DNA from: Mizuhopecten yessoensis
Lineage: Eukaryota
NCBI RefSeq assembly: GCF_002113885.1
Contig: NW_018408551.1
Span: 328,033-392,032, forward strand
DNA: 64,000 nt
Reading direction: 5' to 3'
The translations under genes were made by a program, and so were the position numbers. Below the pieces are notes generated by a model. It saw only the letters and a program-made list of their open reading frames with translations. It had not been told where the DNA came from and did not search any database. This document shows, one piece after another, positions 21,227-51,328 of the stretch. Within the stretch, counting starts at the first letter, position 1. The number at the start of each line of letters is the position of its first letter.

Positions 21227-21592
21227 CTGCCTAGTGTCGTTGCTTCTTAGATGAGTAATATTATATGTTGTTGATGGCAATGGTGTTGAAGGTTGTGTAT
21301 GTTGGTGTCGTTATCGGGGGCGTTGTCGTTGGTGAGCACTGAGGAATATCCGCTATATTTATATAATCCTGTCCTCTAGACATTCCACAGACTAAAAGCA
21401 GATTTGCCAATGTGCTAATAGCTTTAATATAAGAGTGTCACGGTATCAATTTGTTTTAGGGAAACACTTTGAAAATATGACGGATATCATAAAAATGCCA
21501 CCCTAATATATAGCTCTAACAAATTATCAGGTCCCCGTGAATAAAATATCACAAGTTATGGTGTAGAACACTAAGCATGAGTACGAAGAGGT

Positions 21593-22517
21593 TTCTTCTT
21601 CTTCTTCTTCTTCTTTTTCTTCTTCTTCTTCTTTTTCTTCTTCTTCTTCCTCCAAATCTTGAGTTGGCATCCCAGGGATGAGCGCATGCCGGTTGACAGT
21701 TAAAAATCTCTTGGGCAGTATATACAATTAGAAGTCTGATAGAATGAACTTATCCGGAAAGGCCTTGTGGCCTGCTGGGAGGCTGTTCAGCTTGGTCTAA
21801 AAGGCCGCCAGGGTTTGGCCAGTCGCCATCCCAGGTGGGAGGCTGTTCCACTGCTGTGCTGTTCTGGAGAAGAAGGATTGTTTGTAGCATTCCTTATACT
21901 GCACACAGTCTATGAGATCGTTGCCACTTGAGGTATATTTATCAGCTTGGATTTCCACCAGGTCGTTCTGGATCTTGTACATCATGGTCAGTCGAGCTTT
22001 GGATCGTCGTAGCATCAGACTTTCCCATCCGAGTTTTTGAAGGATGATGGTGACTGTGCCTTGTGTATATGTGTGGAACTCTACCGTGACAAACCTGGCT
22101 GGTGCTCTCTGTGTCTTTTCAATGGTGTTACTCAGGTTGGTTGTTGCTGGGTCCCATACTGTTGACGCATTTATACTCGGAAGTTGGTCGCACGATAGTT
22201 TGATAGGCAGCTTCATTGCCAGGCTTCTTACAATTCCGTAAGTTCCTCTAGATGAAACCAAGTGATCGTGAAGGGCTGGCTATGATGTTATCGTCATGGT
22301 AATTCCACCGTAAGTCTTCACTCATGGTCACTCCGAGGTACTTGCTCTTCTCCATCCTCTCAAGAATGTTGCCATGAAGAGTATAGTTGGTGATTGTAAG
22401 GCGCCGTTTGTTGCTGATATGGAGGACAGTACACTTTCCGGATTGAACGACATCTGTCACATGTGCTCCCATCTTTCCAAGGCTGTCAAGTCTTCCTGCA
22501 ACGCACGGGCATCCTCT
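21593..22517 (-). mobile_element. Non-LTR retrotransposon (LINE, CR1/L2-Jockey-group-like), 3' part with (GAA)n tail
   Basis: Degenerate RT C-terminus: EDARALQEDLTALERW, KYLGVTMSEDLRW, VWDP, QRAPARFV, LGWESLMLRR..RLTMMYKI, SFFSRTAQQWNSLP. The (TTC)n tail at 21593-21650 abuts the host exon. Confidence 0.9.
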
Positions 22518-23000
22518 TAGTCCGAATTATTCTGACGTTTTATCAACTTTTTTCATATCGGTCTGTCGTCGATTAACATCAGAACTCCGGCCCTCTATAA
22601 TATGCGGGAAATATGCGACCCGCGCCCGGAGCGCACTTCCAACTGATATTTTAGAAACAAATCGTCACTTTCACACACATGTCGCACATGGATCGAAAGA
22701 TCTATTCTTTATGCACAAGATGAACATACATAACATGCCCCAAACAACCAATACAATCACTAAAAACATATTTTTTCAAACTTACTCTGCTTTGTTTTTT
22801 ATAGCCCCGCCTTCTAATGCCACATGACTTAAATCTCGCCGGTCTACGTCATAACTCAATCGCAACTTCTCGGCCAATTCCGGCTAGGCGCGGAATGATT
22901 CCGCGCCTAGCCGGAATTGGCCGAGAAGTTGCGATTGCGTCATAACTTTGGGAAATACCTTCGGTAACGCGGGATCTCGTCAAGTCATGTGACATTGCTC
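22518..23000 (+). mobile_element. Left arm and interior of a long-TIR DNA element (MULE-like, 9-bp TSD)
   Basis: The 199-bp arm 22518-22716 (tagtccgaattattctgacg...) is nearly identical to 24317-24515. It is preceded by gcatcctct (22509-22517), the reverse complement of agaggatgc that precedes the other arm. Confidence 0.75.
22857..22937. mobile_element. 81-bp perfect-palindrome mini-insertion with 10-bp target-site duplication
   Basis: 40-bp arms caatcgcaacttctcggccaattccggctaggcgcggaat / exact reverse complement around a single G (22897). Flanked by direct repeat cgtcataact (22847-22856 and 22938-22947). Confidence 0.85.
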
Positions 23001-23951
23001 ATGGCCTAATTTCCATTAAAAACATGGGTTGGTATAGTTACTGAAATGTCTGCTTTAGAAGATTGTATATATATATTACGAGAATACCAGAAATCGACTA
23101 TCTCAATATTGTTTTCATGAACTTTTGAAACCGAATTTAAACACAAAAATAGGATTTAGTTTTTGTGTTTGGGAAACATAATTTGAAAATCTTACCATTC
23201 TTTTAATATCTTTAATTGATGATATTTGTCCGAAATTCCAATGACAAGGGCACAGTTATGGAGCTCAACTTCAAAGCTATTATTTTATCAAGGGATCATG
23301 TGCCTCCGGAGAAACGATTGTCATGGAGTCTGTGTTTGCCTACGCCAAGCCGTTATCATCTGGCTGTCCAACAGTTATGACGTCACCGACCGTGCCCTCT
23401 TAATGTTGCACGTTCGAGAAGAACGACTTTGGAATGCAGTATGAAGGACATACTTCGATAATTGTATAAGAATTGTGACGGTAAAACGACGTGCATTACG
23501 ACGCCCGTTTCCTAGAACGGACTAATTACATGATGGCCCGTGTCTAATGGGCAGTAGGTATGTATGATTTAGTAAAAACTATAAACTAAACCCATATTAA
23601 GCGAAATAGAAGAAATCTGAAGAGACTGGTTAAGGTTATACTAAACATAAACGGGTTGTTATTCAATCAGACCATTCAAGAAGCAAGCTTAAGTGACATT
23701 TTGTCTCGTTTTGGTAATGTGAATTTTATTTAGTTGTTTCATTTCATCACGAAAGAAAACTGTTCTCAATTGGAAAGTCCACACTTTTTATAACACATTG
23801 TAACTTGTATATATCTTTGTTGTTGAATAAGCCTCTCAATATAGTCCTGTTTCTGCTTAGAAATGACATAGATAAGTTGCAATGCAAGTACAACAGATGC
23901 AAAAGTGTTTCTTTGGAACACTGAATACCCAGATGGCAATATGACACGAAC

Positions 23952-24316
23952 TTATCACCACAGTTGACGCGATAGCTAGATGGAGTTTGTCAGCAGAACA
24001 GGTTGATGTGATCTTGTTGGATTTTAGCAATGTGTTCGACAAGGTCCCACACCACAGGCTGCTGCGTAAACTCGACCATTATGGGATAAGAGACACCACT
24101 CAGAAATGGATTGAGGACTTTCTTTTAGCAAGGACACAACAGGTTCTACTGGACGGTACAGTATCATCCACGGCAGACGTCATATCCGGAGTCCCCCAAG
24201 GGACCATTACTGTTTTAGGCCAACATAAATGACAAGCCTGAATGCAACACATCAAATGTTCGTCTCTTTGTTGATGATAACATCTTGTTTCGGCGCATTA
24301 GGAGTAGAGAGGATGC
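23952..24316 (+). mobile_element. 5' part of the same LINE, now inverted
   Basis: RT core: QVDVILLDFSNVFDKVPHHRLLRKLDHYGI..WIEDFL..RTQQV..SGVPQGT..RLFVDD..FRRIRSREDA. It continues exactly into EDARALQEDL of the minus-strand piece ending at 22517. Confidence 0.9.
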
Positions 24317-32503: not shown

Positions 32504-35500
32504 TCAACAGGTGTCCTCATTCATATGGGTGCTAACCAATTTGCCGTCGGCGGCATTGGTCACATCAATACACACAGTGTCCGACCGTCGTGGCCGGAAC
32601 GCTGTTATAACGTTAGTAAGTGTGCTCAAGGTGACTCTCCTGGATGGAGAGGGAAGAATCGAAGACCAACGATGTAAAGGTTGAGGGGACACTGGGTTCA
32701 CACCTTGCTGAGGTACGTCTGTGTCGAAACCTGAACCTAAGCTTTGCCCTAACCCACTGAGTCGTTTCTCTAGGGTCCGCTCCTTTGTTCTGATGCCTTC
32801 CAGCTTCTGTTCTATGGTAGCTTCTTTCGCTTGTATTTCAGATTCCCTCCTCTCAAGAGCTTCCTTTTTTCTCTGCAGTCTTCTTTTCTTCCTTTTCGCC
32901 TTTTCCATATTTTTACGGAAAGCCTGTTCTGCCTGAAACAATGCGATAGGAGGCAGGCGTTTTGGATTGAGAGGGGTGGAGTTAGCGTTCCTGTCTTCGG
33001 TTCCGTGTTTGTTACCCTCACTGAGAGGCTCTCCGGTACCCAGAAGTGCGATAGGCGGTAGTTTATTATGTGTTTTTTCCGGAAAGGGTGCCACGTGGTT
33101 TGGTTTTATTGTCGACTTTGGGGCTATCTGAGCTCCTGTTGGTATGAATCTGCCCAGAAGAGGGTTTTCAAAATTTGAACTCAATGACTTTTCATCTGAA
33201 TCTTGTTTCTGGAAAATGCAAAACAGTTTTGTTTTTATACGCCGTAGATATTTTCAGGGTGACCCACAAAATAAGTATTTTTCCTGACTATATCTTAATT
33301 TGTAACATCATATAATTAATCTATCAGGAATGAAAAGAAATAAGTTAGTTGGAAAGCATTCGACATATCCTATAGAAATAAGAAATCACCAGTATTTCAC
33401 AAAATATTCCGTTTTTCGGTAAGGTACAGTGAAAGGTTGTGGACAAATATTTCATTGTGTTTTAATAATATATAACAAATAACGATGTTAATCTTAAACA
33501 ATTATTATGGTTGAAATCGACACAAGTCACAGATAATAAATCGTTATCATCATCTGCCGAAATGAAATTGACTGTTTGCAAGTTTTTTCTACATCGACAC
33601 CTACCTTTTCTTTGCAGCAACGTTCTTTTAGTTTGTCGCGGCACAGAAGAAGGATCAGGATGATAACCAGTATGAGGACGACAATGACGACAACGATAAT
33701 CCAGATATCTAGAAAACAAGGAACCTGGACTATTTACAGGGACGGAAGGGAAGACGTAGTGGGAGTCATCAAAAAGAAAACGGAGACATCAAAAATAAAA
33801 CATCTCACATCACCACAGGGTAAAACATCACTATTTCCAACCAATGTGATTGAGGAAGAACTGATTAATTTTACCTTTACTAGATCGATCACTTAATGTG
33901 CATTGTTTAACATTTTTCTTCACTGACACTTTTTTTTTCACCCTTTTAATTCAATCACTTTACATTCAAATTAAAGAAAAAAGAAAGCCAAAATCCTTAT
34001 TCATTCATCAATACAAAGTATTGTATGTACAATATAAGAAAACTTAGTTGTAGATAGTCTTCTTTTTACAGTTGACATGCACACCTGCGTCAGACCTCAC
34101 TACATTATTGCCATTTAACATGTATCCTTCACATAACATAATGTAAATAACACGGAAATTTCAATACAAGGTGATGAAAAACTAAACTAAAATACAAAGG
34201 ATTTGAGCACACTCATTTGTTGGAAATATATGAACCTATGTTAAATAAGCGTTAACCAATGAAGCAGTCGCCTCTTGTATTTTTGATCGTAATCTATTTT
34301 GTTAAACAGTGTGTTATTGACTATTTCTGTTTTTTTCTTATCGTGTTCAGGTCGACTTCAAGAAATAGTACTTCTGTCTTACATCTCAATGTATAATAGT
34401 CTACCGTGTTTATGAAAAACAAAGGTTGCACTGTAAAGACTGACTGAGGAGTGCAAATGTTTCCATCTGGCAGTATCGATTGAGAACTAATAAGTGATTG
34501 TGATACAAGTAATGGGAATCTATTTTCAACACATATGCAAACAACTGAAGACAAGAAACATCTTGGAGCTATTTGCAGCAGTGATGGGAAATGGATAGAA
34601 TATATATAGATGACATTGTTCGTAAAGCTTCCAAATAAGTTGCAAAAGTAACCACGAATGAAGTTTTGTTCACCAGTATACCAACAAGAATATGTATGAG
34701 ATATGATAAAAAAAGAAACAACAATAAAAACTAAGCAATACTATTCTGAAAGTAGTACAAAGGGTGCCAGACCAGAATTCGATCACTGGACCTTCAATTT
34801 AAATACGGTCGCTCAACCCAACGGAACCTCTTGATAAGTAGTTTATATCTAGCCCTTTCCAGTTTTATATTTGGAACGAAAGTAAAGGGAGGTCATTTTG
34901 AGTATGAAAAACAGTATTCTCTAGAGTTTGCAAGCAAAGGGACATGAATTCTTAAGCAAAAATGATTTGATGAAATATTGCATTTCTTGCTCGTGACAAT
35001 TAATTTGTGGGGACGCCAGTTAATCAATAGTTGAAAAAAGTCAGTTAGAAGCTGGTTGATCTGTTACACTGTTGCCCTTTAATATCCAAACTGATTTACA
35101 ATTCTCTTTTAACTCTTTCCGTACCGCAACTCCGGTCCGGATTCCGTACCGGATGTACTTATTAGACTCGCCCCCGCGCATTAAACAAAATGGCGGATTT
35201 TTAATGTACTTTTTTAACTAGGTGTAACTGCCGCAAGAATTAAACAGGTAACCGTGAACAAATATTGTTATTGTTTCATGTTCTGGTTCATAGACAAACA
35301 CTTCTTCATTTTCGCAGCATAATGACTAACTGGCAGATGATTATGACTGAAAAATCGACATTTGTCTGGCAATAAACGATACGATTCCTTGTATTTAATA
35401 CAGCGTTGTAGTACATGTTTCCAATGGGGTTTGATTATGGTTACGAATGTGGAGTCGTTGAGTTTTTTTCTAAATACAAGTAGATTTCATCAAAACTTAT

Positions 35501-38500
35501 ATTAGAATATTCAAATTTACTTCCATAAGTCTCAACAAATATCTGATGATGAATTTACGAGTGTTCGTATCGAATTAAGTTGCCGCCATCTTGTTTACAT
35601 TTGAGGCACCAAACGCAAACATCTTACGGCAAATGCGAAAACTTTAAGTCACATAATAAAAAAGTGTGCTCTGCACAACTAAAATTCTTTCTTCCAAACT
35701 GATGGGTTCTGATTTTAGCGACAATTAATTGTTTTGTCGCGACTGTCTCGTGCGATAACCAACTAAACATAAGACAGGTTACGTCAGCGTCTCTTGTCGT
35801 GTGTACACGACAACAGGGATGAGACGGCCCATTATTTTGTCGTCTGTACACGACAACGGGGACCAGGATGACATATTGTTGTCGTGTGTACACGACAACG
35901 GTACGGAAAGAGTTAAGACGGCAGATTCGTTAGTTGTCGATATTTTATACAACAAATATGAAATTTAGGCCACTAATTATTGGAAAGATACCTTGATAGG
36001 ATTTAACGAATGTGCAACAATAAGATATTTAATTATCGATTGCAAATAATGCAAAACTCTCGTTTCTTCATCAATTATTAGAACATGAAGTTATCTCGAC
36101 AAATATATCAAACCATCCGAAATTTTCCACGTCTAAGATCATAATATTGTAGTTCAGCGCATGGACAAAGTAGTGCCAGTTTATTTGTTTTATTAATTAA
36201 AAGTTTTAAATGCGATGAGAATATAAATGACAAAATGATCATCTCAAATTCATTCATTGCGTAATATGTAATGGTTACACGGTTATTCTCGAAGAGGACT
36301 TTGCTTACTTTGTAAAACTTCTGTCCGAAGCGTTTGCGAAACATTTGTAACAACACAATATGTTTAAATAAAAAGCTTACATGAATCCTCCCCGGCGGTA
36401 CCACTTCCGGCGGCTGGCGTATTACCGGTCCCAGGGGTGCTGCTTCTTGGACTTGTGACATGATCTGTTGTTGGTATTGTGGTTGGCATTGGTGTTGAAG
36501 GTTGTGTAGATGGTGGTGGTGATGTTGATTCTGGCGTTGTGATCAATGGCGTTGTCGTTGGTGAGCACTGAGGAATATTCGCTTTATTTATATAACCCTG
36601 TCCTCTAGACGTTCCACAGGCTAAAGTCAAGTTTGCTAATGGGTCTATAGCTGTAATATAAGACAGTATCAAGGTATCAATTCTTTTCAGGAGTTAGAAT
36701 ATTGTAAACAAAATTATGTTACAGGTGGGTTTTTAATTATAAGTTTTTTTACTTTCGTACTACATTTTCTTATCATGATGCATTTTACAGCATTTTTTTT
36801 TTTTTTTATAACAAAGTACACAGTAGATGTAATATTCAAGAGGAAGCATGATTAAATTAAACTAAACCTGTGATCAGAAGGAAGAATTTGCCAGCGTTAA
36901 TGCCAAGTGTGTTGTTCGCCTCAATTTCAAGATAGTAAGACTCGCTGTCATAGATGTAAGTCGGTATGAGGTCCGTATTTGATTCACAGCCAATGGAGGT
37001 CCTGTTTTCGCCATCTTTTATCGTCAATGATTGGCCACATACTCCGTTTTCAGAGATCAATATAAAATTAAGAGCACGAACGCGAAGTTGCGATACACAG
37101 GAAGCGGCCACAGAGCATGAGTACGAAGACATTTGTGTCATATTGCCATCCGGGTATCCAGTGTTCCAGAGAAACACTTCTGCGTCTGTTGTACTTGTAT
37201 TGCCACTGATTGTCTGTATGTCGTTTTCTAAGAAGAAACATGGAGATGATGAGACATTAATTCAACATCAAGAATATGTATTTTTTAGTTGTATTATAAA
37301 AAATGTACCCTTTTCTTTTTGTCGACAATTTTGATCATAATAAAAAACAAATCGAATTACATCATCATTACCTCACACGGCAAGAGGATGCCATGCCGTT
37401 TGTTTTTGTCAAATAGTCTGCTTGAATTAACATATCGGCTCCTATAAACCTATAAAAGTTTTGTTCATCTAACCCCTGCAAATATTTCTGCTTCTTCTTA
37501 TCATCATGATGTTATGATTTTAAATAAAACAACGTTTACCTGCCAAACAATAGAAATAGGCCACCATGTAGTTAGTCCGTTCTAGGAAAGAAGTAATACT
37601 GCAGTTCGGCGTCTCTACCCAGGCAACAGGCGTCGTAATGCACGTCGTTTTACCGTCACAATTCTTATAATATTCTTGATGACTATGTCCCTCATATTTC
37701 ATTCCACAGTCGTTCTCGTCGAACGTGCAACATGAAGAGGGCACGGTCAGTGACGTCATAACTGTTGGACAGCCAGACGATAACGGCTTGGCGTAGGCAA
37801 ACACAGACTCCATGACAATCGTTTCTCCGGAGGCACATGACCCCTTGATAAAATTGTCGTCGGTGTTACCGTAACAGGCAGAATAACTTTGAAGTTGAGC
37901 TCCATAACCATACCCTGAAAAAGAGAATTTCGGCGAATGGTGATTGCATTTTTCAAATCTAATTTACCAAACTAAGTGCAAATCGAATCATAATAACATT
38001 TGGTGAACACATTTCACGGAAAAGGTTCTTTGATAAAGAAATTGTACTTTCGATACAAGTACCTAACTTTGAATTTTATGTTAAGCCATTAAGGTACAAC
38101 TGAACAAATAGTTCGAAACGAATATGTGCCTTTTTCATTTATACCGTTAGATTATGAAATTCAGGAGACGAAAAAGGATTATGGTTATTTAAACTGCTTT
38201 ATTAACTGTATAACATATTGAACGTTAACGCATATACATATGCATTGGATTTCTGACGATCATGAAAATGTATTGTAAGAATTTTTTAAGAATGATTATT
38301 TACCTAATTTATTAACACATATTATAAGGTATCTGTGTATACACTTAAGTTCATGTGGTGTTCAGAATAGAAAATTATTATCAAATCTGCCAGCTGAATA
38401 AGAAGCAGTAACCTAAATAATGACCGTCAGAAAGATTATCTTACTGAGTCCTCTGCATGTTCTTGTGGTTCTAGATTTGAAACAGCATCTCATTACTTCC

Positions 38501-39520
38501 ATGATTGTATCAAATACACTGAAGATCGTATTGTACTTTTTCAGAATATATTCCATGAAACTCACAAACATTTGTCATTAGATGTCATGCTAAATGGTTG
38601 TGAGAGATGTGATGAAAATGAAAACAAACATATTCTCCAATTATATCCAATTACATTTTAAGTTCTAGAAGATTCAGGACATTTAACTTCAATTTTGAAT
38701 GAAATTTTATATTTTATTTATTAACACTTTATTTATTTATTTACATTTTATTTTTTCTCAATGTAATTCTTCTGATTTCCAAAAATGGTACATGAATATT
38801 AATATTAATATTTCCTATTTGTCTTCATTGTTTATTTCTAAATATTGTTAGTGAGGGGGGCTGGGGTTTAGTAGACCAGTTATACTATTTTATCAAAAAT
38901 ATTGGGAAACAACTACATAAATAAGAATATAAAGCTTTACAACATGTCAATTATATATATCTAACCTGTGTTTAATATGCATAAACTAAACTATTTGATG
39001 GGATTGAATTTCCAAACTCATCAGTGGATGGCCTTGTGTGATACAATGGACTTTTTGGCCTGTATCTGTTGGGTGCGGTAATTTAATCCCATCAAATGTT
39101 TATACATACAGCTCCATCAACAAATTATTTTTCTCTTCTCTTCATAGTATGTATATATATATAGTATATGTCTTTTTCGGTATCAAAATAAAAGGTTGGA
39201 ATTTAAACCATTATATTCAATTATAATAAAAATGAGTATTATTAGTTGTTTATCCTAATTTGATTATTAATTTGATAATACCAACTTATTTATATGTGTT
39301 TGTATGTGTTCTAATGTCTATGTCTATGCTTGTACCACTGTCTGTTACTATGTTTGGAAAGGGCTTAAATAGGCTATGCCTGCTGCCCAATCCATTTGTC
39401 CTTTGACAATAAAATTTATTGAAATTGAAATTAAGAAGCATGCACGATTCTGTCTGAAGGTGATGTCAATAACGGGTAGGTCACAAACTTAAATGAGAAC
39501 AAAATATGCGGCAAAGACAT
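32504..39520 (-). CDS. Copy B: type-I membrane protein, SUEL/Gal-lectin-like + CUB-like + Thr/Pro stalk + TM + basic coiled-coil tail (~637 aa)
   Basis: Confident in-phase exons: 37914-37540, 37227-36868, 36650-36381, 33708-33605 (YIWIIVVVIVVLILVIILILLLCRDK), 33208-32504 (stop). Tentative 5' exons 39520-39489 + 38412-38345 give a hydrophobic leader MSLPHILFSFKLLLLIQLADLIIIFY. Same downstream exon phases (1,1,1,1,0) as copy A. Confidence 0.82.
35113..35912. mobile_element. Non-autonomous piggyBac-type MITE (800 bp) in copy B intron
   Basis: TTAA on both sides (35109-35112, 35913-35916), 14-bp TIRs ctctttccgtaccg / cggtacggaaagag, and three subterminal quasi-palindromes ttgtcgt(g/c)tgtacacgacaa near the right end. 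Confidence 0.88.
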
Positions 39521-42358
39521 GATAAGTTGTCAGACCGACTCCAATACATTTCGTGTATGCTGTATAGTAGTGGTGTACTCGCCAGCCTTCACTTTTGTTA
39601 TTGTTCACAATGAGTGTGACGTTGTTCCTACACTACTACATATTTGTATTTCTTTTTTATATTTTAAAGGTTTTGTAATATATCGCACGTGAGGTCTTTT
39701 CTTTGAGCCGTGTACTAGGTACCACATTTTCACCGTAAACCAGGAAGTGATTCACATGTAACCAGGGCAACTACCTGCCATTGACACTCCTTATAACTGC
39801 TAGGAAGCTCATTTTAAGTCGTTTATTGGTAATCATAAATTACATTGAAAACAAAACAAATAGAGTCTCTAAATTACTACCATCCGGGCAAACTTGTGCA
39901 TTCAATTCATATCAAATTGCACCTGATTAAATGCAATGTTTAAATTACAGAACTTAATGCACATAGGTATATAAATTCGTAATACTAGCTTATCAACACT
40001 AGCAAACAATTTACCTACTAATCATTAGCTGCAACGATAGGTACTTACCGTTAAACAGTTTTATAAAACGGGAAATCTTACTAAACGTCAGTAACTATAT
40101 ATAATAAATGGTTGTTTGTGATTAATGAACTTAACCAATTAACAGTTTGTACAACAGTTGTATACGAATAAATAATTACCAATTTACAGTGGTATACAAG
40201 TATAAAAATCAATTCGTATAATTTACAGTGGTATACAAATCAGTTCTTACCAATTTACAGTTGTAGTAAGAACACCTCATACCAATTAATAGTTGTATTG
40301 TTACTTAATGCTTATAAACATATCAATATTTACCAATGAAGAATGGGATGCACGTCACGATGAATCCAACAATCAGGAGCCGATTACATGGTGGCATATC
40401 GGAGAAACTGCTAATCCTTACATGTAGGGCAGTGACAAACCAGAAGGCTAGTCTACGTACACACGACCATGCTCACACCCATACTACACACCATAACTAC
40501 TCCCACTGTCGACTGTGTAGGGTTTTGTTCAGTATATTTAAACGGATATACGATACTTACGGTTAATTGGGGATGTGCACGTACAGCAAGATGTTTTTAA
40601 TTTTCAGAGCAAAACTAAATGTGCATATACTTTTGAATACACAATCAGTCCCTATTCAGAGTATATGTGGTGGTGCATTGTTGAGTAGGTCTTGGCATCA
40701 ATATTAAAATCTATAGTATCACCGACATGGAAATTCTGATATGTACAAGTACAAAGCGAGTTAAACGTATAATGGTATTGCGTATATCCTGGTAACAAGT
40801 TGGTGTGTAGTGGTTAATAGTCAACTACGACTGATACACAGTCAGTTCAAACAATCTGAAAATGGGTCGATAATTCAATCTTTCAGATCAACACTGATTA
40901 TTTGTTTTCCTGAACAGTGGGATTAGTCACGGGATTCGGGCAATTAAATATGATGATCCTAGGAACATTATACATGTGTATGTCTATATACCATGCCTAT
41001 AAGTGCCCTCTTCTAACTATAATAAATAGTTTACATACGTCATATTGTAGTAATGATAAAGTATATGTATATGTTTTGATAATTGCATGTCATTATGTTT
41101 TGAAAACTGTTTATACAGAAACTAGAATACTTATTTTCATATTGATAACGAGTCTTTGAAATCAGTAAAGAAGGCATGACAAAATACTGATGATCTATAA
41201 AATCTTTTCAGTTTTAGTAATATCTTTACAACGAATACATCGATACGTATCTCTTCTTCAATATTGAATAAACATCACATTTTACAGATAAACGGAAGAA
41301 AGGTAACCGCTAATTGCAGATAACCTCATAGAGTAAAATGACAATCATACACTGTAACCAGAGTAGTAAGAAGCCTCCCCAATTGAAAACCATGGGGTTT
41401 TAGTGTGTTAAACATCGTGTGGATGTTATAGGCAAACTTTCCTGGATTTGTGCGTACAGGAAAACATTATTTCGAAGTAACTGATTTTATCGCCGAGTTT
41501 TGGCGTCATGATGCCAACCCTTTTTTTCGGTCACTTCAATTCATATTGGTGTTAACCGTATCACCTAACAGTTTCGATTTAGTCTTTTAGTATTGATTCC
41601 GTAGTTTATTTTTTATTTTACCTTAGGTCAAAGGTACCATGCCGCAAATCTTCGCTCTTTTTTCCTGTTAAATCGGATAACTCGTATTTTTCTTATATAG
41701 CAAACGTGATTACCTTTCCGTTGTGGAAGTAAAACGTGTCAAAGATGTACAATATAAAATAAGAATTTCATCTTATTTTCTTATATGCCGTAAAGAATTC
41801 GGTATTATACATAATGTTAATATATACAGACACGTACAATGTAAAACGTGGTCGGACAAGCAGGTAGACAGGTAAAAGCTGACAGCCAATCAACCTCTCA
41901 ATAAAGTGAAAGTATATTTCGAGAATTCTTAGAGCAATGGAATGCGCTTAAGGAGGAAAAGAATCTGTCCACCAGTTACGAGGCTTTTACTTGACGGGTG
42001 AGAACTGAATTTTCTAAGAGTAACACGCAGAAAGTTTATTGTGTTAACATTACCTCTGACCCAGTCGAAGATATATTCGTTTGGTTTTGCTCTCGTGACA
42101 TCTAGTGAATTCGCTTGTAAATAAAAATAACGTTAACATGGCCTTAACCCTGCCTCTGCTGGAATAAGCAGCTGTGGGGAAAAGGTCGCGCAAGGCTTTA
42201 CTTGACATATATATAAGTAAGCTTTTTAAACCAATATCCTGATAGTATTTATGGAATATTACGACTGCAGTTTTAACCACATTTTCTCCCACTTTCAACC
42301 AAGCAGCTTCACATGATGCTATCCCTATGATTTGACGTACGTATACATAATTCGATGT

Positions 42359-42580
42359 GGTCGGTTGGCGCAGTGGATATCGCACTCGCCATTTACGGCC
42401 GGGGTTCGATTCCCCGATTGGACGTGAAAAGGTGTGGGTTTACCTGCCCGACTTCGTCTGTTTTCTTCGGGTACTCCGGTTTCCTCTCACATCAAGACAA
42501 CCAGCGTGTTAACACCAGGGCCAACAGGAGTGATTAATATAAGTTTTAATGACTTGTTACGTAATTGTTGTAAATTAAAT
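42359..42580 (+). mobile_element. tRNA-derived SINE with V-domain-like core
   Basis: A box tggcgcagtgg (42366-42376), B box ggttcgattcc (42403-42413), and cgggtactccggtttcctc.cac core. Confidence 0.75.
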
Positions 42581-44544
42581 AACCTTAATATATTCTATGA
42601 TTAGAAAACAAATAAAAATACCGAACTTAAAAACCTAAAATGGTCAGTGTTTACCTCTTTTCTCTCCTCGATTTGTAATTATGTAAGCATGTAACTACTG
42701 CAAAAATGTTTCCTTACACGCATCTGTTTATTTCTCGGTTTGTAATTTCGTAAGCGTGTATGTTACCACAGAGTGAATAGCTATATATCACGTGGAACAA
42801 CGATATTAACAAACAGTCTGGCCAATTTCTATAGACTCATTACAATAGAGACACTGTTATGTGAATAACGTAATGAGTCAGGTATCATCGCGTCGCAATG
42901 TATGTAGTCCAATCGATTATTAGATAAATTCACCGACCAGGAAGTTAAAATATATACAATGAAAATCAATATATATACTTCAAATTACAAGCGACACAAG
43001 AAATTATGACGCTGATGTTATTCGACAAATATTTATTAAACATTCAAAAGTAATATATATATATATTTATATGTTATACATTCATTATTTGAATCACAGT
43101 TATATATAGTGACGTTATAAATCAATACGATAAATATTTCGAAAACTTCATACCGGTACGTAACGTCTTTTTATTGATAAGTGACGAATTATAGCGTATA
43201 TTGATTGTGTGTTAACTTAATATTGTTATAATGTATAATAAATATTTTATTTGTATAATCAAAAGTCACTTTGAAATCAAAAATAATTCATTAAGAAGTA
43301 GATTATGGTTTCTTTCAAAAACAATAACAAATGGAAACAAGAAAGGAAAAATATATTCCTTTTTTAAATCACAAATAGCATATCTAAAAGTATATGATTA
43401 ACAATAACAAAAAAGAAATATATAAAAAGAAAAATTAAAATGATAACCTCTAAGTAAATACAACATATTTGCATTCGACAACTATAAACAAAACATTCAA
43501 GAGAAATATATTTATATATATATATTTATTATCATTTAAAGCAAAATTGTATAGAGTAACTTATTATAAATCTTCTGTCTGCAAAATACATTAAAAACGT
43601 ATACAAGTAAAGAACTATAGCGAAGATTGAAATATTCTTGACTAATACAATTATAGGGAGTGTTACATGCGTTACGTTTCAATACACATTTGTGAACACT
43701 ATGCGAACATCACACATGAATTAGCATGATCATAAATAGCAAGCAGATCAGTTTTGTTTAAAAGTGCTCGATTAAATAGGAATTCCCGCCCACCTCCCAA
43801 TTAAACGCAAGAATATTATATATTGCAGAACATGTGTGACTGACAATATTCCCTGGTAAGACAGATATTAATGGCAGCATGCCATTTTTTCTGTTAAGTG
43901 TCATATAATACTTTTAAAAGTGTTACAAGGAAGTTCGTATAGGATATTTCACAACCACTCATAGACCAGGAAGTTTATTAACACATGTATCACAAAACAT
44001 ACTTCTGTCTGTGATACAAAAGATTTTGGCACTGAATTGTCCAACATGGGGAACTAAAGCCAAATATACAAGACACAACACAATTACGACCGATACTTCT
44101 AATCTGAAACCTTCGGAACAAATAGTGTATAAGATATATTGTGTTTATTACTATGACGCACCTAAATGAATCAAATTTTCGATGGGCCGTAACAAACCAA
44201 AAGACATATTTATCAATTTGATATATCACAGAAACAAAAACGACGAAGAAAATTAGCCAATGACTAGAAACCTAGATCGGCGTGAACGGACACCACACCG
44301 AATGCCTCCATATATGATGATTGCAGTCATATATCATTTACAAAAAATAGAAACAATTAAAAACATAATGCTAGCTATTTTATAGCAAACATGTTTATCG
44401 TTTTTAAACTTTGGTTTTGACACGTGTCTCATTATGTAGCATAACGTCTCTAACAATAATTGATATCGAACTATACATTTGTGCTTTCAAAGCAAAATTT
44501 ACCATTGTTTCTATACGCCGGAGTACGAAGGTCCAGTGTTTGTA

Positions 44545-47500
44545 CTAGGTCACTGTAACCACGTCTATAGTTACAGATGTAGACTTTATAGATGTCCTAA
44601 GATCATCGATCTGTGTAACCTCAAACGCATCATTTTTCTTCTTTTTGTCACCTTTGTGCTTCCTTTTCTTCTTGTGTTTATGTTTACCTGTCTTTGTACC
44701 TTTTTGTGATTCTGCCTTTCCCCCTTTCCCCTCAGAAATTGACGTTTGGGTAATTGGAGAAAGTTTCTGCCTTCCATTTAAAGCAGGAAGAGGGAGAGAA
44801 CTCATAAATTGGGACACAGGGGCCACTTGAGATAATACCGGTTTCTCAAAGGAGGCAAATAGAGCACATTCATCCGATTCAGGAGGGCTCGTTTCTGTAT
44901 CGGGATGTATAGCAGACTGGAATGAAAACAAATGCATATATTTTCGAAAGCAGTTGTAACAAATACATGAATAAATGCATAGAAAATGTATGGAGTATTG
45001 TCATTGGCTTTTCTACAGAACGGGTTTAATAAAGAACGGATATATAATAATTTATATATAATGCATAGTTATAAATCTTGGCAAATCGATCATCGTACCA
45101 TTGATGCTACAATTTAATGACAACATTGTCTGGCAACATTCTTCCTCTGCATCGGGCTTGCATAACATGAAAAGTTTGATGACCGAATCGTGAATGAGCT
45201 ACTTAATAAACAGGCAGGCATAATATGAGTGGGTGGTGGTCTCCTTGTAAGAAGATTGAAAGATTTGTCTCACAGGAAACAAGCATGTTCTACATAATTT
45301 GCGAGTGCTTATTATCTCAAACAACCAATGTTTACAAACATCGATACTTACCTTGCACTTTTTGAAATACAGGTCCTTTATTCTATTCTTGCAGAGGACC
45401 AATACGATAAGAATCACAAAGAGTACCACCAGAACGACAAGAGGGATGACCCAGAGAGCTTGAAAAGAAACAGGATAGAAATCATTAATTTTGACGTCTA
45501 ACTTTAGAGGATTTGTTAAAAGCAACCAATGATGCTATCTGAACAAATAGAAAGCGCTTGAAAATATCCATTTTTTCTTAAAGTGTTTTTTTGCACAACT
45601 GCTATACGTTTTGTAACACTTGGCCATTTTCAATTGATTGGGTCTCACTGTGTAATTAGTCTACGTGGAATGACATGAAGAAACTTTGTGATGTCATACT
45701 TGAATTGGGATGTCATATTTTACATAATATATAACGCATTATCAGCGGATTCTTTGGCACCAACTTCTGACAGCAGACTGTATTACGTACGCCGTCATCC
45801 TTCTGTAAAACATCTGAAGTTCGGGTCGGAGAAAACTTTCCAAAATATGTTCATCAAACCATGCGATTGGTAGCAGAAAAGATGGGTTCTTTGCAATTTT
45901 GATATCTTATGGGAGAAACGAGATATGTTGAAGTCATATCGAAACTCAAATTTTCCTTTTCAATAGACAATTCTTAAATTGATTTAATTCTACAATACAA
46001 TCACATGCGTCGTTGATATTTAGCAGAAACAAATTTTAACATTCCAATAAATTAGAGAGTTGAACCATGTCAGAATAGAACTTACGTATTCCTCCTTCAT
46101 CTACTGGTAATTGTGTTGGTGCTGGGGCTAGAACATTTGGTGTTAGTCCCAACGAAAGCGTTGTTTTGATGTTATTGTGAGAGGATGTTATTGTTCCGGT
46201 GTTATTGTCAGTGGTGTTGCCAGTGGATACTGTTGTTGTATCGGTAGTATCGTCCGTGGATGTTGTTATGTCAGTGGTGTTGCCAGTGGATACTGTTGTT
46301 GTATCGGTAGTATTGTCCGTGGATGTTGTTATGTCAGTGGTGTTGCCAGTGGATACTGTTGAGGTATCGGTAGTATTGTCCGTAGACACTGTGGTTGTAT
46401 CGGTAGTTTTGTCCGTGGTTGTTGTTGTATTAGAACAAGCAGGCAGATCTTCAGCCGGTACCTTTCCTTCCCCTACAGATGTTCCACACGCTAACGTCAC
46501 AGTATCATCACCATGGTCGCCTGTATTATATATTAATCTTGAATCAGTAACATATACAGTTAAAGTACTTTTAAAAAGTACATAAAAAGGAAATGCATGT
46601 TGGTAGAAATTATAAAAGGTTGTCAAACAGAATATACCCGTTTTTACCGAAGATGTTAACAGTTGCCAATAATTTTAATTAACGCTATAGAAATGAAATC
46701 TTCAAGTTTTTAATAAGACACTATGAAAATATTAATCAACCTTAATCAAAGTATACGTACTTCCAATCTGGAGAAGAAAATACCCAGAGTCCGTATTCAA
46801 AGTGTTGTTTACTTGTATTTCGAGATAATGAGTATTGTTTCCGATATTCAGGTCGTAGGGAAGGTAGTTGGTGTTCGAATCACACATTAAAACTTGTGTG
46901 TTGGTTCCGTCTGTTATGGTCAGCGATTGTCCACAAATTCCCCCGTTTTCCGTAAAATTTAAATTAAGGGCTCGTATTTTGAGACTCGTGGCACACGATG
47001 CTGATACAGAACATTTGTATGACGAGTTTGCTGGCAAAGTGCCAGTGTCGTTGCCAGACTCATACCCAGGATTCAGCAGTAGGGCAGTAGTGGTGTTGAC
47101 ACTTCCGTCATCACTTACGTCCTTCACATCATTTTCTGAAAAGGAGATACACGTAAATCTTACCGACTTTAAATGCCCGAAGCGCTAAAACATCAATACT
47201 ATTGATTGTTAACATAGGGTTTCCTTTGTAACGCCAAATAAGAATTCATGGACAGAATATAATGAAAAATAAAACGTTGGTTAAGATCCTTTGTATCAAC
47301 TAAAGTCTAGTAACATCTTTTGATTTTTGCGCTTGATATTTATTAATAAATAATAATAATAATTCGGGGTTCTTTTTTACCGTTTTATCACAACCTAGTT
47401 CGTAGGTCGTCTCAAAGCGGTTCACACATTATTATCCGTGGTTATAGGGCCTTTGCAACCAGCCAATATCTTTCTCAACTCCATGGGGAGCATACAGCCG

Positions 47501-50500
47501 GAGCTGCCATTTCAGCGCTCAAAGCTAGCATTTAACAATTCTAGCACTGCCCAACCACATACTCATTTACAGCTGAGTCGACTGAAACAAGTGGAGTAAA
47601 GTATCTTGCCCAAAGATACAACACAGTGACGTGCCGTGAATCGAACCTGCAACCCGTCCGTCACGAGCCCGGCGTCCTACCACTAGACTACCGTTTATTG
47701 AGCTTATCAACCTATCTAATGATGGTTAAAAAATGTCGTTGTATTGTAAATTTCAGTATAGTCGAAATATATCTATGTGAAATATATCTTTGTGAAATAT
47801 ATCTATGTGAACTAATATGAAACTGAATGCCACATTATTTCTTAAAAACTAAAGAGAATAGCTGAACAATCAGATCTTTCCAAACACACTCCTATATCTG
47901 CACAAAAACGATAACTAGTTTAATGAGTTAAATAAGTTGTAGTCTGATTCAAGCCGAGTTCGAACATTTTTGTTTTATCATGAGTTGAGTTGAAATCGGT
48001 CTGAGTCGATCTCCAACGTTATTGGTATGAGATATGGTTATAACATTAATAAGAATACATTGTAAATATGAAATAATCCAAAATTTGCTTTATAATCACA
48101 AATAACTACATACACACCTGATATACAGTAAAAGTAGACCGCCATATAATTTGTCCGAGCGATATATATCGAGGAGTTACAGGGCGTGTTGGCCCAGGCA
48201 ACGGGCGTCCATGAACACGTGGTTCGGCCATGACAGTTCTCAAAATAAGTATTCTTGTTGAAGCCATCGTACTCAAATCCACAGTCGCCAGTATCGTACT
48301 GACAGCATGACTCCGGGGTAGTCGCTGCACTGGTCATAACTTGGGGACAATTTGATGACAAAGGTTTCGCGTAGGCATACACGGAATCCATCACGATCCT
48401 CTCGTCATCGCCGGGACAGGAAGCCTTAATGAAATTGTCTGTAGTGATCCCATAGCAGGCGGAGTATGTGTGACGATACAGGCCCAACACACCTTGTGAC
48501 CAGTAACAAAAAGACGAAGAAATTTGTTCATTTCAAGGATTTGAAAAAAAAAAGTTTCGCTAAGATATATCAATACGAACATTATATGCTTATTTCATAT
48601 AAATAATGTCTTCATATATATTTTCCAAAGTACACTTCATGTTCTCACTGTCTTTCGTGTATTTTGTATAATGATTAACGACAGGGAAATGTTACACTTA
48701 TTTTGATTGTACGCTGTAAAATATTTTATGATATCAGCATCAATGTACGACTTTAGGAGAGTAGTGTTTACCTTTAGGATAAAGTTAAAAACGTCCAATC
48801 GGTTGTCTCACATTTCTATTAATCTCTGGCAACTGTAGTTAATTAATATATCAAATCATATGAAATGTTAAGCTTAGTTTGCTTAGCGTGGTTAAAAACA
48901 GAAACAATTGAGAATTTGAAGGGTTACAATATAAATAAGTTACAATATTATTTCCTTTAATTTCGAAAAAAACTAAATACAAAAATTAAGGTATTCCTTT
49001 TTAACCATTACACCATTGAGTAATTCAAATCGGGATGCCAGGCACCTAGCATATTGGAATATTTAAAAATATTCGTATTTTTGAAGCAAAACTATTAAGA
49101 AATCATCTAGATATCTCAAAAAATATTTTGTAAAACTTACAATATTATAGATGTTGTTTATTTTTGGACATTCAAAAAAATATTTATCTTCTTAATACCG
49201 AAGAACAAGTGTTGCCTGGGTAGCAGCAACCTTTGGACCCATTGCTTAACCTTTTACGTTGTTTATAATGAATATTATCATGAAACATATTGATTCCAAA
49301 ATAATTTTCAATGCTTAAACGATGAACTGTTTATCATTCCTAGACATGATTATAGGGAATATTGGTATACAGACTGATCAAAAGGTACCAAGTCTACAAT
49401 CCCTCTTGAAATGTCTTTCCATTTTGAGTGCTGTTGAAATAAATTTACTTTTGTGTATCTTAAAATAACTCGCACGATTTTCAAAGTCTGCAAGATATTC
49501 AATTTCCTTATCTTTAAAATTTCCGTTTTACTCTTTACAACACTCGAAATAATTCTATGTCAGAAGCGATTTCTTTTTAGAACTCTTGTCATAATAATCC
49601 TAAGCATCCATTACAACAACCATACCACCTTCTTCTGCCTCCTTTATTACGATGGATTTATCACTCATTAATTATTGTGAAATTTTATGTTATTTATACG
49701 ATAAATAATTCGTAGTCTAATCTTATTAAATTGATATGTATTTAGATATGATATTGATTTCTCACATATTGTGGCGGATTCCATTTGAAATGATTTTTGA
49801 CTAACAAGATTTAAGATTTATTTATTCACTCATGACACACAAAGTGACCAACAAAAGGTCAACATCTTAATACATCTCAGTTACAGTGGGTCATCAATGT
49901 CCGCCGGAAGAAGCCCAAGAACTGAGGCAGAAAGCTAACGGTCACTTGATGTGGTTTCTAACTATTTCCCCCTGAGGTTGATAGTGAGTACATAAAACCT
50001 ATATAATATTCAGCGTGAAATAATGATCACATCTTAACTGTTTACCAATGATTGATTTAATCTTTATTGAAAAAAGCAATAACATTATGACATACAATTC
50101 ATACACAATGTTTCAATCCAATGTCTTTGAAGATAATGTTTGAAAACAAATGCATTTCGCCAAGTATAACATTTCCTCTTTTGAAAACATGAATGTAAAC
50201 CAAGTATATCATTTTATGTGTAAAAGAATAATAAGATATCAAGCCTAAAATATATCGTCCTTAGAAAATTATTAAATACAAAGCATAACATATTAATTCT
50301 ATGCTGAACAGAATAATTAAATACCAAGCCTTTGCATATTTCTTAATGAAATACACTGATAATTTTCTGGGTTTGATGATAAAAAAAACCCAAAGTGACG
50401 TTTAGCGTGTAGTGTGAATATTTTGATATTTCTTACCAGAGCGTAGCACCAAACGAATGAAATGTATTTCTTGTTCACAAGTAAACCAAGAATATTCTAT

Positions 50501-51328
50501 TAACATTTTTTGTTGAAAATTCTTGGACTATCATGGAAAATGGTCAGTCTCTCATCACAAATGGTGTATTGTACCTTAACAATAAAACAAAACTAGGCCA
50601 CTATGAGGTCAGTATTTACAATGCCTATTACTGGTCATTCTATACAATAAATCCTGCGCTCTGCTCTCAATATCCGTCTCGGGTTCGCTTTTCACATGTT
50701 AGGCTGTGTGTTGAGATTTAATTGAGCCCTTAATAAAGATACTATCTGTAATATCATGACGTAATATGCGAAGTCGTATCGATTTCATAATCAGCTTCAC
50801 TGTTTATATGACTGTACCAGATCGTCTGATATGTTCATATTTTCATGAATACACTATTTTGGCATGACATTATAATATTGATATATATATATATATATAC
50901 GCAATAGCACCGTACCGTTTTTTGTTTCAAATTTCTGCTCGATTTACCGTGTACTCAACAGAAAATGTCTAAGCTTCGGCTACAATTCATGATGTGTCCG
51001 AGGTCTCACTTTGAAAATAGGTTACTTATACTTTTTCAGATTTTGATTTGACTATATTATCAAATCACAGTATCAGCCCTAACAGGTATAGTTGGGCGGA
51101 ATCTCCTGATCCCATTCTCCCCATTAGTGTTAAGGTCTCTAGTAGTTAAAGACGTTAGTCATTCCACATTACAGCACAAATACAGGATTACTATTAAACC
51201 TTACATTAGTTGATATATCTAGTTTGTGTATACTTAGATTTGTCTTATATTTGATAAACGTATAAAGAGGTATACTCACCGCTGATGCTGGCCACACATA
51301 CCACTATGTAAACACCCGTCCTATCCAT
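44545..51328 (-). CDS. Copy A: type-I membrane protein, signal peptide + SUEL/Gal-lectin-like + CUB-like + Thr/Asp mucin stalk + TM + Lys/His-rich tail (570 aa)
   Basis: Six exons with canonical sites and no stops: 51328-51280 (MDRTGVYIVVCVASISG), 48492-48118, 47135-46761, 46520-46086, 45458-45352 (PLWVIPLVVLVVLFVILIVLVLCKNR), 44916-44545. Total 1713 nt. Confidence 0.88.
46205..46420 (-). repeat. 63-bp coding tandem repeat (21-aa TSTDNTTDTTTVSTGNTTDIT) in copy A stalk
   Basis: tcagtggtgttgccagtggatac recurs at 46208, 46271 and 46334. Confidence 0.9.
47411..47693 (-). mobile_element. tRNA-derived SINE (CORE/Deu-like internal domains, LINE-like tail)
   Basis: Minus strand: ggtagtctagtggta (A box), ggttcgattc (B box), ttgggcaagatacttta, cagctgtaaatgagta, gctgtatgctcccc..ggagttgag, gtgaaccgctttgag tail. 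Confidence 0.75.

What the first reader, a model, noticed from the sequence alone, without database searches (positions are those of the whole stretch)
32504..51328. Tandem family of unannotated single-pass receptors: divergent SUEL lectin + CUB-like + mucin stalk + basic signalling tail
Seen: two complete minus-strand genes can be spliced with the same exon/phase plan (375-nt Cys-rich exon, 360/375-nt exon, stalk exon, TM exon, tail exon), plus a dead third copy. The six-frame track shows them only as unrelated fragments. Established: SUEL/rhamnose-binding lectin domains have 8 Cys and YGR, DPC and KYL motifs; SUEL+TM receptors include EVA-1/EVA1C and latrophilins. Here the Cys frame is kept (C..C..C..C..CxGxTTC..C..YxC), but the motifs read YAK, TPC/TPNC and NYM and an extra CC pair is inserted. 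The next exon resembles a CUB beta-sandwich (NPGY/NTGYP, CSV, LRVRALNF, CGQSLTI.DG, YLEI, G.F.L.I). Inference: a lineage-specific, rapidly duplicating surface receptor family whose ligand is probably not canonical rhamnose/galactose, e.g. for microbe or food-particle recognition, gamete recognition or mucosal adhesion. This is the best candidate for an undescribed system in the window.
Basis: partly seen in the sequence, partly recalled or inferred. Interest (0 to 1): 0.8.

Follow-up and report, generated by a model that had tools for sequence, protein, structure and literature searches.

The report
Mollusc SUEL–CUB single-pass membrane protein genes
Two neighbouring scallop genes encode cell-surface proteins with an unusual lectin-like head that has probably lost sugar binding; they belong to an unstudied family found across molluscs, of moderate interest.

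Summary
Two minus-strand genes share one exon and phase plan: a 375-nt Cys-rich exon, a 375/360-nt exon, a Thr/Ser/Pro stalk, a transmembrane (TM) exon and a tail exon. Spliced contigs from two sequencing runs confirm all four internal junctions of gene B.

Curated models (Pfam) see no domain. Predicted folds and profile-profile comparison with canonical scallop domains show that exon 1 is a divergent SUEL/rhamnose-binding-lectin domain and exon 2 a divergent CUB domain.

Two residues that published mutagenesis shows are essential for sugar binding are replaced throughout the family. A protein ligand, or another non-canonical one, is therefore more likely than rhamnose or galactose.

The family is not scallop-specific. 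It occurs in bivalves, limpets and a chiton, with about ten loci in this genome. Gene A and its bay-scallop orthologue are under purifying selection. Some relatives already carry automatic SUEL or CUB labels, but I found no paper on the family.

The tails have no known signalling domain. They do share an enriched LPP[I/L/V] motif and juxtamembrane cysteines.

The dead third copy lies outside the given coordinates, at 21.2–24.0 kb, and the scan noted it separately. Both signal-peptide exons remain unverified.

The parts
51280..51328 (-). Gene B, predicted exon 1: ATG plus signal peptide (16 codons + 1 nt, donor GTGAGT, phase 1). Unverified.
   Evidence: Found by a scan for ATG, a hydrophobic segment and a phase-1 donor. 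Spliced contigs carry 38-141 nt 5' of the Cys exon, and no joint places them inside 48494-50499. The exon itself was outside the laid stretch.
48118..48492 (-). Gene B, SUEL/RBL-like Cys-rich domain exon (375 nt, phase 1/1)
   Evidence: Junction 47135|48118 confirmed in X1 and X2. AF2 pLDDT 89.6. Fold matches. hhalign.
46761..47135 (-). Gene B, CUB-like domain exon (375 nt, phase 1/1)
   Evidence: Both junctions confirmed. AF2 pLDDT 74.9. Z 7.9-11.1 to CUB domains. hhalign.
46086..46520 (-). Gene B, Thr-rich mucin-like stalk exon (435 nt, phase 1/1). It contains about three copies of a 63-nt repeat at 46200-46383.
   Evidence: Tandem repeat at 96% identity. S+T+P fraction 0.47 and 7 N-glycosylation sequons.
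45352..45458 (-). Gene B, transmembrane exon (107 nt, phase 1 to 0) with juxtamembrane Cys residues
   Evidence: Junctions 45458|46086 and 44916|45352 confirmed.
44545..44916 (-). Gene B, cytoplasmic tail exon (123 aa plus stop) with a polybasic stretch. The 3' UTR continues below 44545.
   Evidence: No relative found in this genome or among the fetched family proteins.
40334..40397 (-). Gene A, candidate signal-peptide exon (21 codons + 1 nt, donor GTAAAT, phase 1). Prediction only.
   Evidence: No RNA or homology support.
37540..37914 (-). Gene A, SUEL/RBL-like Cys-rich domain exon (375 nt, phase 1/1)
   Evidence: 57% identical to gene B. 67% identical to the bay-scallop orthologue mRNA product P0004.
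36868..37227 (-). Gene A, CUB-like domain exon (360 nt, phase 1/1)
   Evidence: 75% identical to P0004, dN/dS 0.11.
36381..36650 (-). Gene A, Ser/Thr/Pro-rich stalk exon (270 nt, phase 1/1)
   Evidence: S+T+P fraction 0.51.
33605..33708 (-). Gene A, transmembrane exon (104 nt, phase 1 to 0) with a juxtamembrane C...CC cluster
32504..33208 (-). Gene A, cytoplasmic tail exon (234 aa plus stop): two LPPI motifs, a polybasic coiled-coil-like stretch and a conserved C-terminus
   Evidence: 51-54% identical to the orthologue's tail, dN/dS 0.19.
21242..23964 (.). Dead third copy, closest to gene A: Cys-exon remnant at 23251-23538 (+) with stops and a deletion, CUB remnant at 23872-23964 (+), stalk remnant at 21419-21242 (-).
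   Evidence: tblastn. Also seen. Noted separately by the scan.

Best explanation
Genes A and B are expressed paralogues of a mollusc-wide family of type I single-pass membrane glycoproteins.

Shown:
- Each protein has an N-terminal divergent SUEL/rhamnose-binding-lectin-fold domain with 10 Cys instead of 8.
- A divergent CUB domain follows.
- Next come a Thr/Ser/Pro-rich stalk of variable length, one TM helix and a cytoplasmic tail.

Inferred mechanism:
- The SUEL-CUB head acts as a protein-binding recognition module, or binds a non-canonical ligand, rather than acting as a rhamnose/galactose lectin. The Glu and Lys that are essential for sugar binding in RBL domains are replaced throughout the family, and the central Asp of the CUB Ca2+ site is an invariant Gln.
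- The O-glycosylated stalk holds the head away from the membrane.
- The tail is anchored by juxtamembrane, probably palmitoylated, cysteines. It recruits a cytosolic partner through the conserved LPP[I/L/V] motif and a polybasic segment.
- The protein would therefore work as an adhesion molecule or co-receptor, in the manner of EVA-1 or the latrophilin Lec domain. The ligand and the cytosolic partner are unknown.
For: - Splice plan and phases. All four internal junctions of gene B are in spliced contigs of two runs.
- The bay-scallop orthologue of gene A is an uninterrupted 618-aa ORF on 2.3-2.6 kb contigs of two runs. It is collinear with all five gene A exons.
- SUEL fold: pLDDT 89.6. The top 10 Foldseek/VIA rows are all SUEL/RBL lectin domains at Z 7.0-7.5, the next three score 6.3-5.0, and the next unrelated fold scores 3.8. 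hhalign gives 96.3% with a control of 1.6%.
- CUB fold: Z 7.9-11.1, rmsd 2.2-3.5 A. hhalign gives 86.7% with a control of 0.5%.
- The order signal peptide, SUEL-like, CUB-like, stalk, TM, tail recurs in most full-length relatives. 46 of 51 have an N-terminal hydrophobic segment.
- Sugar site: at +1 from the first Cys the family has Y/F/V and no Glu among the common residues. At the KYL Lys it has N/T/H/S and no Lys among the common residues. In latrophilin-1 RBL, E42D/Q and K120R abolish binding (PMC2430599).
- CUB site: Gln in 41 of 44 sequences where the canonical 'YD' Asp sits.
- Tail: LPP[ILV] occurs 15 times in 11 of 46 tails, against 0.44 expected and a maximum of 4 in 2000 shuffles. 20 of 44 relatives have two or more juxtamembrane Cys. 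Tail dN/dS is 0.19 against the orthologue.
Against: - No binding, localisation or signalling data exist.
- Loss of the canonical sugar site does not exclude glycan binding at another site.
- Both signal-peptide exons are predictions, and no reads were laid on gene A.
- TM and signal peptide rest on hydropathy only, because SignalP and DeepTMHMM were not available and the joined protein was not submitted.
- Tails are otherwise very divergent. Gene B carries only a degenerate LPLPAL version of the motif.
- Two raw RNA runs showed no reads on gene B exons, so expression is restricted or low.
- The LPP[ILV] shuffle test does not correct for relatedness among sequences.
Confidence: 0.6

Rival explanations
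1. Membrane-bound pattern-recognition lectin. The SUEL-like head still binds microbial or food-particle glycans, through a remodelled site that includes the extra Cys-rich insertion, and serves immunity or particle sorting.
For: - The fold is that of a lectin family.
- A review reports that a bivalve SUEL-type lectin agglutinates Gram-negative bacteria through LPS (PMC8878817).
- dN/dS is 0.57-0.66 between gene B and its recent paralogue.
- There are tandem duplicates and a dead copy.
Against: - Both residues shown to be indispensable for monosaccharide binding are absent family-wide.
- The gene A orthologue pair is under clear purifying selection.
- The family is small in this genome.
- The recent paralogue used for dN/dS may itself be decaying.
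Confidence: 0.22
2. Membrane-tethered mucin. The main function is a protective or lubricating glycocalyx on epithelia, and the head domains only cross-link or organise the mucus layer.
For: - Stalks are 47-51% Ser/Thr/Pro, with recent tandem repeats.
- RefSeq names several relatives mucin-like.
- The C2762 paralogue has about 2.9 kb of Thr-rich repeats.
Against: - Stalks in A and B are short (89 and 144 aa).
- The most conserved parts are the head domains and, in gene A, the tail.
- A conserved cytoplasmic motif points to intracellular coupling.
Confidence: 0.12
3. Artefact or dead genes. The exon-like ORFs are decaying remnants, or chance ORFs joined by wishful splicing.
For: - One copy in the window is dead.
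- Pfam recognises nothing.
- Two RNA runs show no reads on the exons.
Against: - Exact GT-AG junctions appear in spliced contigs of two studies.
- All frames are open with matching phases.
- There is an orthologous mRNA in another scallop and dN/dS is 0.11-0.19.
- 297 related clusters were found.
Confidence: 0.02

Closest known systems
EVA-1 (C. elegans) / EVA1C (C21orf63), a single-pass receptor with SUEL/RBL domains
   Same: It is a type I single-pass membrane protein whose N-terminal SUEL/RBL-fold domains lack the sugar-binding Glu and/or Lys. It acts as a co-receptor for protein cues (SLT-1/Slit, MADD-4) (PMC2430599; PMC4133157, listed).
   Different: EVA-1 has two tandem RBL domains, no CUB domain and no mucin stalk. 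The scallop domain has 10 Cys with an inserted CC-containing segment and is not detected by the Pfam SUEL model. No orthology was detected, and every named hit I sampled is molluscan.
Latrophilin / ADGRL N-terminal Lec (RBL) domain
   Same: These are the best structural matches (Z 6.9-7.5) and the only PDB sequence-profile hits (E 0.058-0.68). The PDB entries show this domain in complexes with the protein ligands teneurin and FLRT (titles).
   Different: Latrophilins are 7TM adhesion GPCRs with olfactomedin, HormR and GAIN domains. Here there is a single TM helix and a CUB domain.
Soluble rhamnose-binding lectins (SUEL, SUL-I, CSL3 and bivalve RBLs)
   Same: They share the fold and cysteine framework.
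   Different: Those are secreted, have 8 Cys per domain and keep the YGR, DPC and KYL motifs. This genome's own 45 or more canonical exons show that pattern. The family here reads G/Y-A-K, x-x-C and N-Y-M, and lacks the essential Glu and Lys.
CUB-headed single-pass receptors and co-receptors (neuropilins, NETO, Kremen, DCBLD)
   Same: They carry a membrane-distal CUB domain on a single-pass protein. Kremen, neuropilin and NETO2 CUB domains are among the top structural matches, and the neuropilin-2 CUB is the top PDB sequence-profile hit (E 0.047).
   Different: None of them combines CUB with a SUEL domain. The family's CUB has an invariant Gln in place of the central Ca2+-site Asp and falls below the Pfam CUB threshold.

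Membership tests
SUEL / rhamnose-binding lectin domain (Pfam PF02140) | Match to the curated profile above the gathering score | tested here: not met
   No hit at E<=10 for the exons or paralogues, and none at E<=0.1 in 10 full-length relatives. The genome-wide PF02140 scan finds 45 exons, none on this contig.
SUEL / rhamnose-binding lectin domain (Pfam PF02140) | RBL alpha/beta fold over the whole domain | tested here: met
   AF2 pLDDT 89.6, pTM 0.82. The top 10 rows are SUEL/RBL lectin domains at Z 7.0-7.5 with 84-95 residues aligned, and the next unrelated fold scores Z 3.8.
SUEL / rhamnose-binding lectin domain (Pfam PF02140) | Detectable sequence homology to canonical members | tested here: met
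   hhalign of a 102-sequence family profile against 16 canonical scallop SUEL exons gives 96.3% probability, E 1.5e-9, over 85 columns. The control against CUB gives 1.6%.
SUEL / rhamnose-binding lectin domain (Pfam PF02140) | Eight conserved Cys forming four disulfides | tested here: inconclusive
   76 of 102 family domains have 10 Cys, against 8 in canonical exons. The extra CC lies in a 12-residue insertion. Disulfide pairing was not determined.
SUEL / rhamnose-binding lectin domain (Pfam PF02140) | Sugar-binding residues: Glu at +1 from the first Cys, and the Lys of KYL (PMC2430599) | tested here: not met
   Y 70, F 11 and V 8 of 102 at the Glu position. N 58, T 13, H 11 and S 9 at the Lys position. 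Neither Glu nor Lys is among the six commonest residues. The rule comes from mutagenesis.
CUB domain (Pfam PF00431) | Match to the curated profile above the gathering score | tested here: not met
   No hit. The genome-wide PF00431 scan gives 96 matches, none on this contig.
CUB domain (Pfam PF00431) | CUB beta-sandwich fold | tested here: met
   AF2 pLDDT 74.9, with the core at 80-91. The top 49 PDB entries are all CUB, with Z 7.9-11.1 and rmsd 2.2-3.5 A over 91-108 residues.
CUB domain (Pfam PF00431) | Detectable sequence homology to canonical members | tested here: met
   hhalign of a 44-sequence profile against 7 canonical scallop CUB exons gives 86.7%, E 4.4e-6, over 91 columns. The control against SUEL gives 0.5%. 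The only PDB profile hits are neuropilin-2 and TSG-6 CUB domains, E 0.047-0.9.
CUB domain, Ca2+-binding subset | Glu/Asp/Asp Ca2+ triad that mediates ligand binding. The residue roles come from my own knowledge of C1s/MASP/cubilin CUB domains. | tested here: not met
   The position of the 'YD' Asp is Gln in 41 of 44 sequences. The other two positions vary.
EVA-1 / EVA1C | Two tandem RBL domains followed by a TM segment, and orthology | tested here: not met
   There is one SUEL-like domain followed by a CUB domain. All 29 named clusters sampled from the profile search are molluscan paralogues of this family.
Latrophilin / adhesion GPCR | GAIN domain and 7TM region | tested here: not met
   There is a single hydrophobic segment, and the spliced contigs run from stalk to TM to tail. 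No GPCR families appear in the Pfam scans.
Type I membrane protein | Cleavable signal peptide plus one TM helix | tested here: inconclusive
   The TM segment and the N-terminal hydrophobic segments were seen by hydropathy only. The 5' exons of both window genes are unverified. No dedicated predictor was available, and the joined product was not submitted.

The most novel reading that the evidence does not exclude
The family is a mollusc-specific receptor class. A sugar-blind, 10-Cys SUEL domain fused to a Ca2+-site-less CUB domain recognises a protein cue, for example a settlement, gamete or self/non-self signal. The signal would pass through a conserved cytoplasmic LPP[I/L] docking motif. It might also involve release of the polybasic, NLS-like intracellular domain to the nucleus.
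Probability: 0.2. Interest if true: 0.65.

Novelty: new variant of a known kind. Interest (0 to 1): 0.42.

Why it matters
SUEL-type domains in lophotrochozoans have no established role, as PMC8878817 notes. This work defines a conserved, expressed, mollusc-wide membrane protein family that the Pfam scans run here do not detect.

It gives the family a testable description: a head that should not bind rhamnose or galactose, and a conserved tail motif that can be used as bait.

It also flags RefSeq models in other scallops that appear to fuse neighbouring family members. All ectodomain exons are phase 1, so they join in frame in any order.

Practical value is moderate. It could yield a candidate surface receptor in aquaculture species and a case of a lectin fold turned to non-sugar recognition.

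Tried and rejected
- Pfam on single exons, on paralogue sets and on ten full-length relatives gave only sub-threshold TM-like hits.
- PDB sequence-profile searches gave the expected families, but only at E 0.047-0.9, so I did not use them alone.
- ESM Atlas look-alikes scored about 0.8 for SUEL and CUB clusters. That is a lead only.
- An exact look-up of P0009, the partial gene-A-like product, found no record.
- A homology search for gene A's signal-peptide exon using the orthologue's N-terminus found nothing usable.
- No counterpart of gene B's 5' exon was found within 8.4 kb upstream of the C2762 paralogue.
- Raw RNA runs X21 and X24 gave no reads on gene B exons.
- Literature searches by domain terms and by six accession or locus names found no paper on the family.
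- Gene B's tail has no relative in this genome or among the fetched family proteins. I ran no further search on it.
- dS between genes A and B is saturated, so no dN/dS could be given for that pair.
- The joined spliced proteins were not built for, or sent to, any search or folding tool.
Full report
**Organism and setting.** The window is G000:C5224:328033-392032. RefSeq proteins named Mizuhopecten yessoensis map at 95-100% identity per aligned segment onto this genome's paralogous loci, so this is the Yesso scallop. A SAP18 exon lies at 18949-19284 (+).

**The observation.** On the minus strand, gene B reads as follows.
- Cys-rich exon 48492..48118 (375 nt).
- Second exon 47135..46761 (375 nt).
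- Thr-rich stalk 46520..46086 (435 nt).
- TM exon 45458..45352 (107 nt).
- Tail 44916..44545.

Gene A has the same plan: 37914..37540 (375 nt), 37227..36868 (360 nt), 36650..36381 (270 nt), 33708..33605 (104 nt) and 33208..32504. All ectodomain exons sit between phase-1 introns, and the TM exon shifts to phase 0. The two genes are 57% and 47% identical over the first two exons.

**Transcript evidence.** I laid contigs and reads of four runs on 44500-50499.
- Contigs of X1 and X2, from two studies, skip exactly 44916|45352, 45458|46086, 46519/20|46760/61 and 47135|48118. Every skip has CT..AC ends, which is GT-AG on the minus strand.
- One contig links stalk, CUB and Cys exons. Another links tail, TM and stalk.
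- The contigs carry 38 and 141 further nucleotides 5' of the Cys exon, and no joint places these inside the laid stretch. An upstream exon therefore exists beyond 50499. That agrees with the predicted signal-peptide exon 51328..51280 but does not prove it.
- Two raw RNA runs had no reads on the exons, so expression is restricted or low.

Its support is indirect.
- A partial database product (P0009) uses the same Cys-to-CUB and CUB-to-stalk junctions.
- The 618-aa orthologue sits in a 90% cluster with an Argopecten irradians protein. It is an uninterrupted ORF on 2.3-2.6 kb contigs of two runs and is collinear with all five gene A exons, tail included.

**The dead third copy.** It lies at 21242-23964, outside the stated coordinates. 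It has stops and a deletion, and its pieces are on both strands. The scan recorded it as a separate finding. Contig C74853 is 99% identical to gene A across introns as well, so it is an allelic duplicate and not a separate paralogue.

**First domain.** Pfam gives nothing for the exons, the paralogues or ten full-length relatives. The genome-wide SUEL_Lectin scan finds 45 canonical exons, none of them here.
- The AF2 model is confident, with pLDDT 89.6.
- Its top 10 PDB matches are all SUEL/RBL lectin domains (latrophilin Lec, SUL-I, CSL3) at Z 7.0-7.5. The next three score 6.3-5.0 and include the rice beta-galactosidase C-terminal domain and Plasmodium P113.
- The next unrelated fold scores Z 3.8.
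- A 102-sequence family profile aligns to 16 canonical scallop SUEL exons at 96.3% probability, E 1.5e-9, over the whole domain. The control against CUB gives 1.6%.

I conclude that this is a divergent homologue of the SUEL domain.

**Second domain.** The core of the AF2 model has pLDDT 80-91. The top 49 PDB entries are all CUB domains, with Z 7.9-11.1. hhalign against canonical scallop CUB exons gives 86.7%, E 4.4e-6, and the control against SUEL gives 0.5%. I conclude that it is a divergent CUB domain.

**Ligand sites.** In mouse latrophilin-1 RBL, sugar binding needs a Glu at +1 from the first Cys and the loop-2 Lys of KYL. The substitutions E42D, E42Q and K120R abolish it. The authors note that receptor-borne RBL domains often lack these residues and may bind proteins instead (PMC2430599).
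- In the family the Glu position is Y, F or V, and the Lys position is N, T, H or S. Neither Glu nor Lys is among the six commonest residues in 102 sequences.
- The buried YGR Arg is Lys in 100 of 102.
- 76 of 102 domains have 10 Cys rather than 8, and the extra CC sits in an insertion.
- In the CUB domain, the position of the canonical 'YD' Asp is Gln in 41 of 44 sequences.

From this I infer that the head does not bind monosaccharides or Ca2+-bridged ligands in the classical ways.

**Stalk, membrane segment and tail.**
- The stalks are 47-51% Ser/Thr/Pro. Gene B's stalk carries a 63-nt repeat at 96% identity.
- Tails vary in length from 37 aa to over 900 aa and have no Pfam domain.
- LPP[ILV] occurs 15 times in 11 of 46 tails, from scallops to Patella and Lottia. 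Shuffles give 0.44 on average and at most 4 in 2000. Gene A has two copies; gene B has only a degenerate LPLPAL.
- 20 of 44 relatives have two or more juxtamembrane Cys. Both window genes have a polybasic 30-aa stretch with 14-15 Lys/Arg.

Palmitoylation and partner docking are inferences, not results.

**Family range and evolution.**
- The exhaustive profile search found 297 clusters at E<=1e-3.
- All 29 named clusters I sampled are molluscan. They include scallops, oysters, mussels, clams, unionids, Solemya, Patella, Lottia and the chiton Liolophura.
- This genome has 12 matches, including the dead copy and the allelic contig.
- Most full-length relatives share the same domain order, and 46 of 51 have a signal-like N-terminus.
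- Gene A against its orthologue gives dN/dS 0.11 for CUB, 0.19 for the tail and 0.38 for the stalk, at high dS.
- Gene B against its recent paralogue on C2762 gives 0.57-0.66 at dS 0.2-0.35. That paralogue has a greatly expanded stalk and a tail remnant with a stop codon, so it may be decaying.
- RefSeq models in Argopecten (B-like head plus the whole of A) and in Pecten maximus (three B-like units) look like fusions of tandem genes. They also indicate that the B-then-A order is conserved.

**Comparison and verdict.** The proteins work most like EVA-1/EVA1C and the latrophilin Lec domain, where an RBL fold on a membrane receptor is used for non-sugar recognition. They also resemble CUB-headed co-receptors such as neuropilin, Kremen and NETO. 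They are not members of any of those families.

I found no paper on this family. Some relatives already carry automatic SUEL-type or CUB labels.

The architecture is well supported, but the function is inferred. Interest is moderate: this is a new variant built from known domain types, not a new kind of system.

The joined spliced products were not built or submitted. Full-length folding and signal-peptide or TM predictors therefore remain to be run.

Noticed in passing
window 47300-47700 (intron between gene B's Cys and CUB exons): A very abundant repeat. Summed contig depth is about 10^4 in X1 and X2, and raw RNA reads lie on both strands with many loose ends and variants. It looks like a SINE-type element with a tRNA-like segment.
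   Followed up: no
window 26000-28700: A GC-rich block (0.58, against about 0.35 around it) with a strong AT skew of -0.33. It holds a 466-aa ORF (26810-28210 +) with only a weak CCCH zinc-finger hit.
   Followed up: partly
L062 (G000:C2762:1949500-1958000), about 290-3185 and 4457-4546: The closest paralogue of gene B has about 2.9 kb of Thr-rich 'TDTTTVSTASN'-type stalk repeats. It also has a gene-B-like tail remnant with an in-frame stop. It may be a decaying copy or a giant-stalk variant.
   Followed up: partly
L004/L013 (G000:C74853): A 1.9-kb contig that is 99% identical to gene A over 1351 nt, introns included. It is probably an unplaced allelic copy, and the database holds a partial 301-aa product for it.
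   Followed up: yes
P0151 (XP_069104727.1, Argopecten irradians) and P0001 (XP_033739596.1, Pecten maximus): These RefSeq models appear to fuse neighbouring family genes: a B-like head joined to the whole A-like protein, and three B-like SUEL-CUB-stalk units in a row. All ectodomain exons are phase 1, so such chimeras stay in frame.
   Followed up: partly
P0011, P0077, P0092, P0125 (other subfamilies): The tails of another subfamily share an N-Y-Y-[ED]-[STA]-[VI] tyrosine motif. P0077 stands for a cluster of 320 members seen in many sequencing runs, so that subfamily may be highly expressed.
   Followed up: no
window 18949-19284 (+) and 58900-59208 (-): A SAP18 exon (E 9e-21) lies upstream and a WD40 exon lies downstream.
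   Followed up: partly
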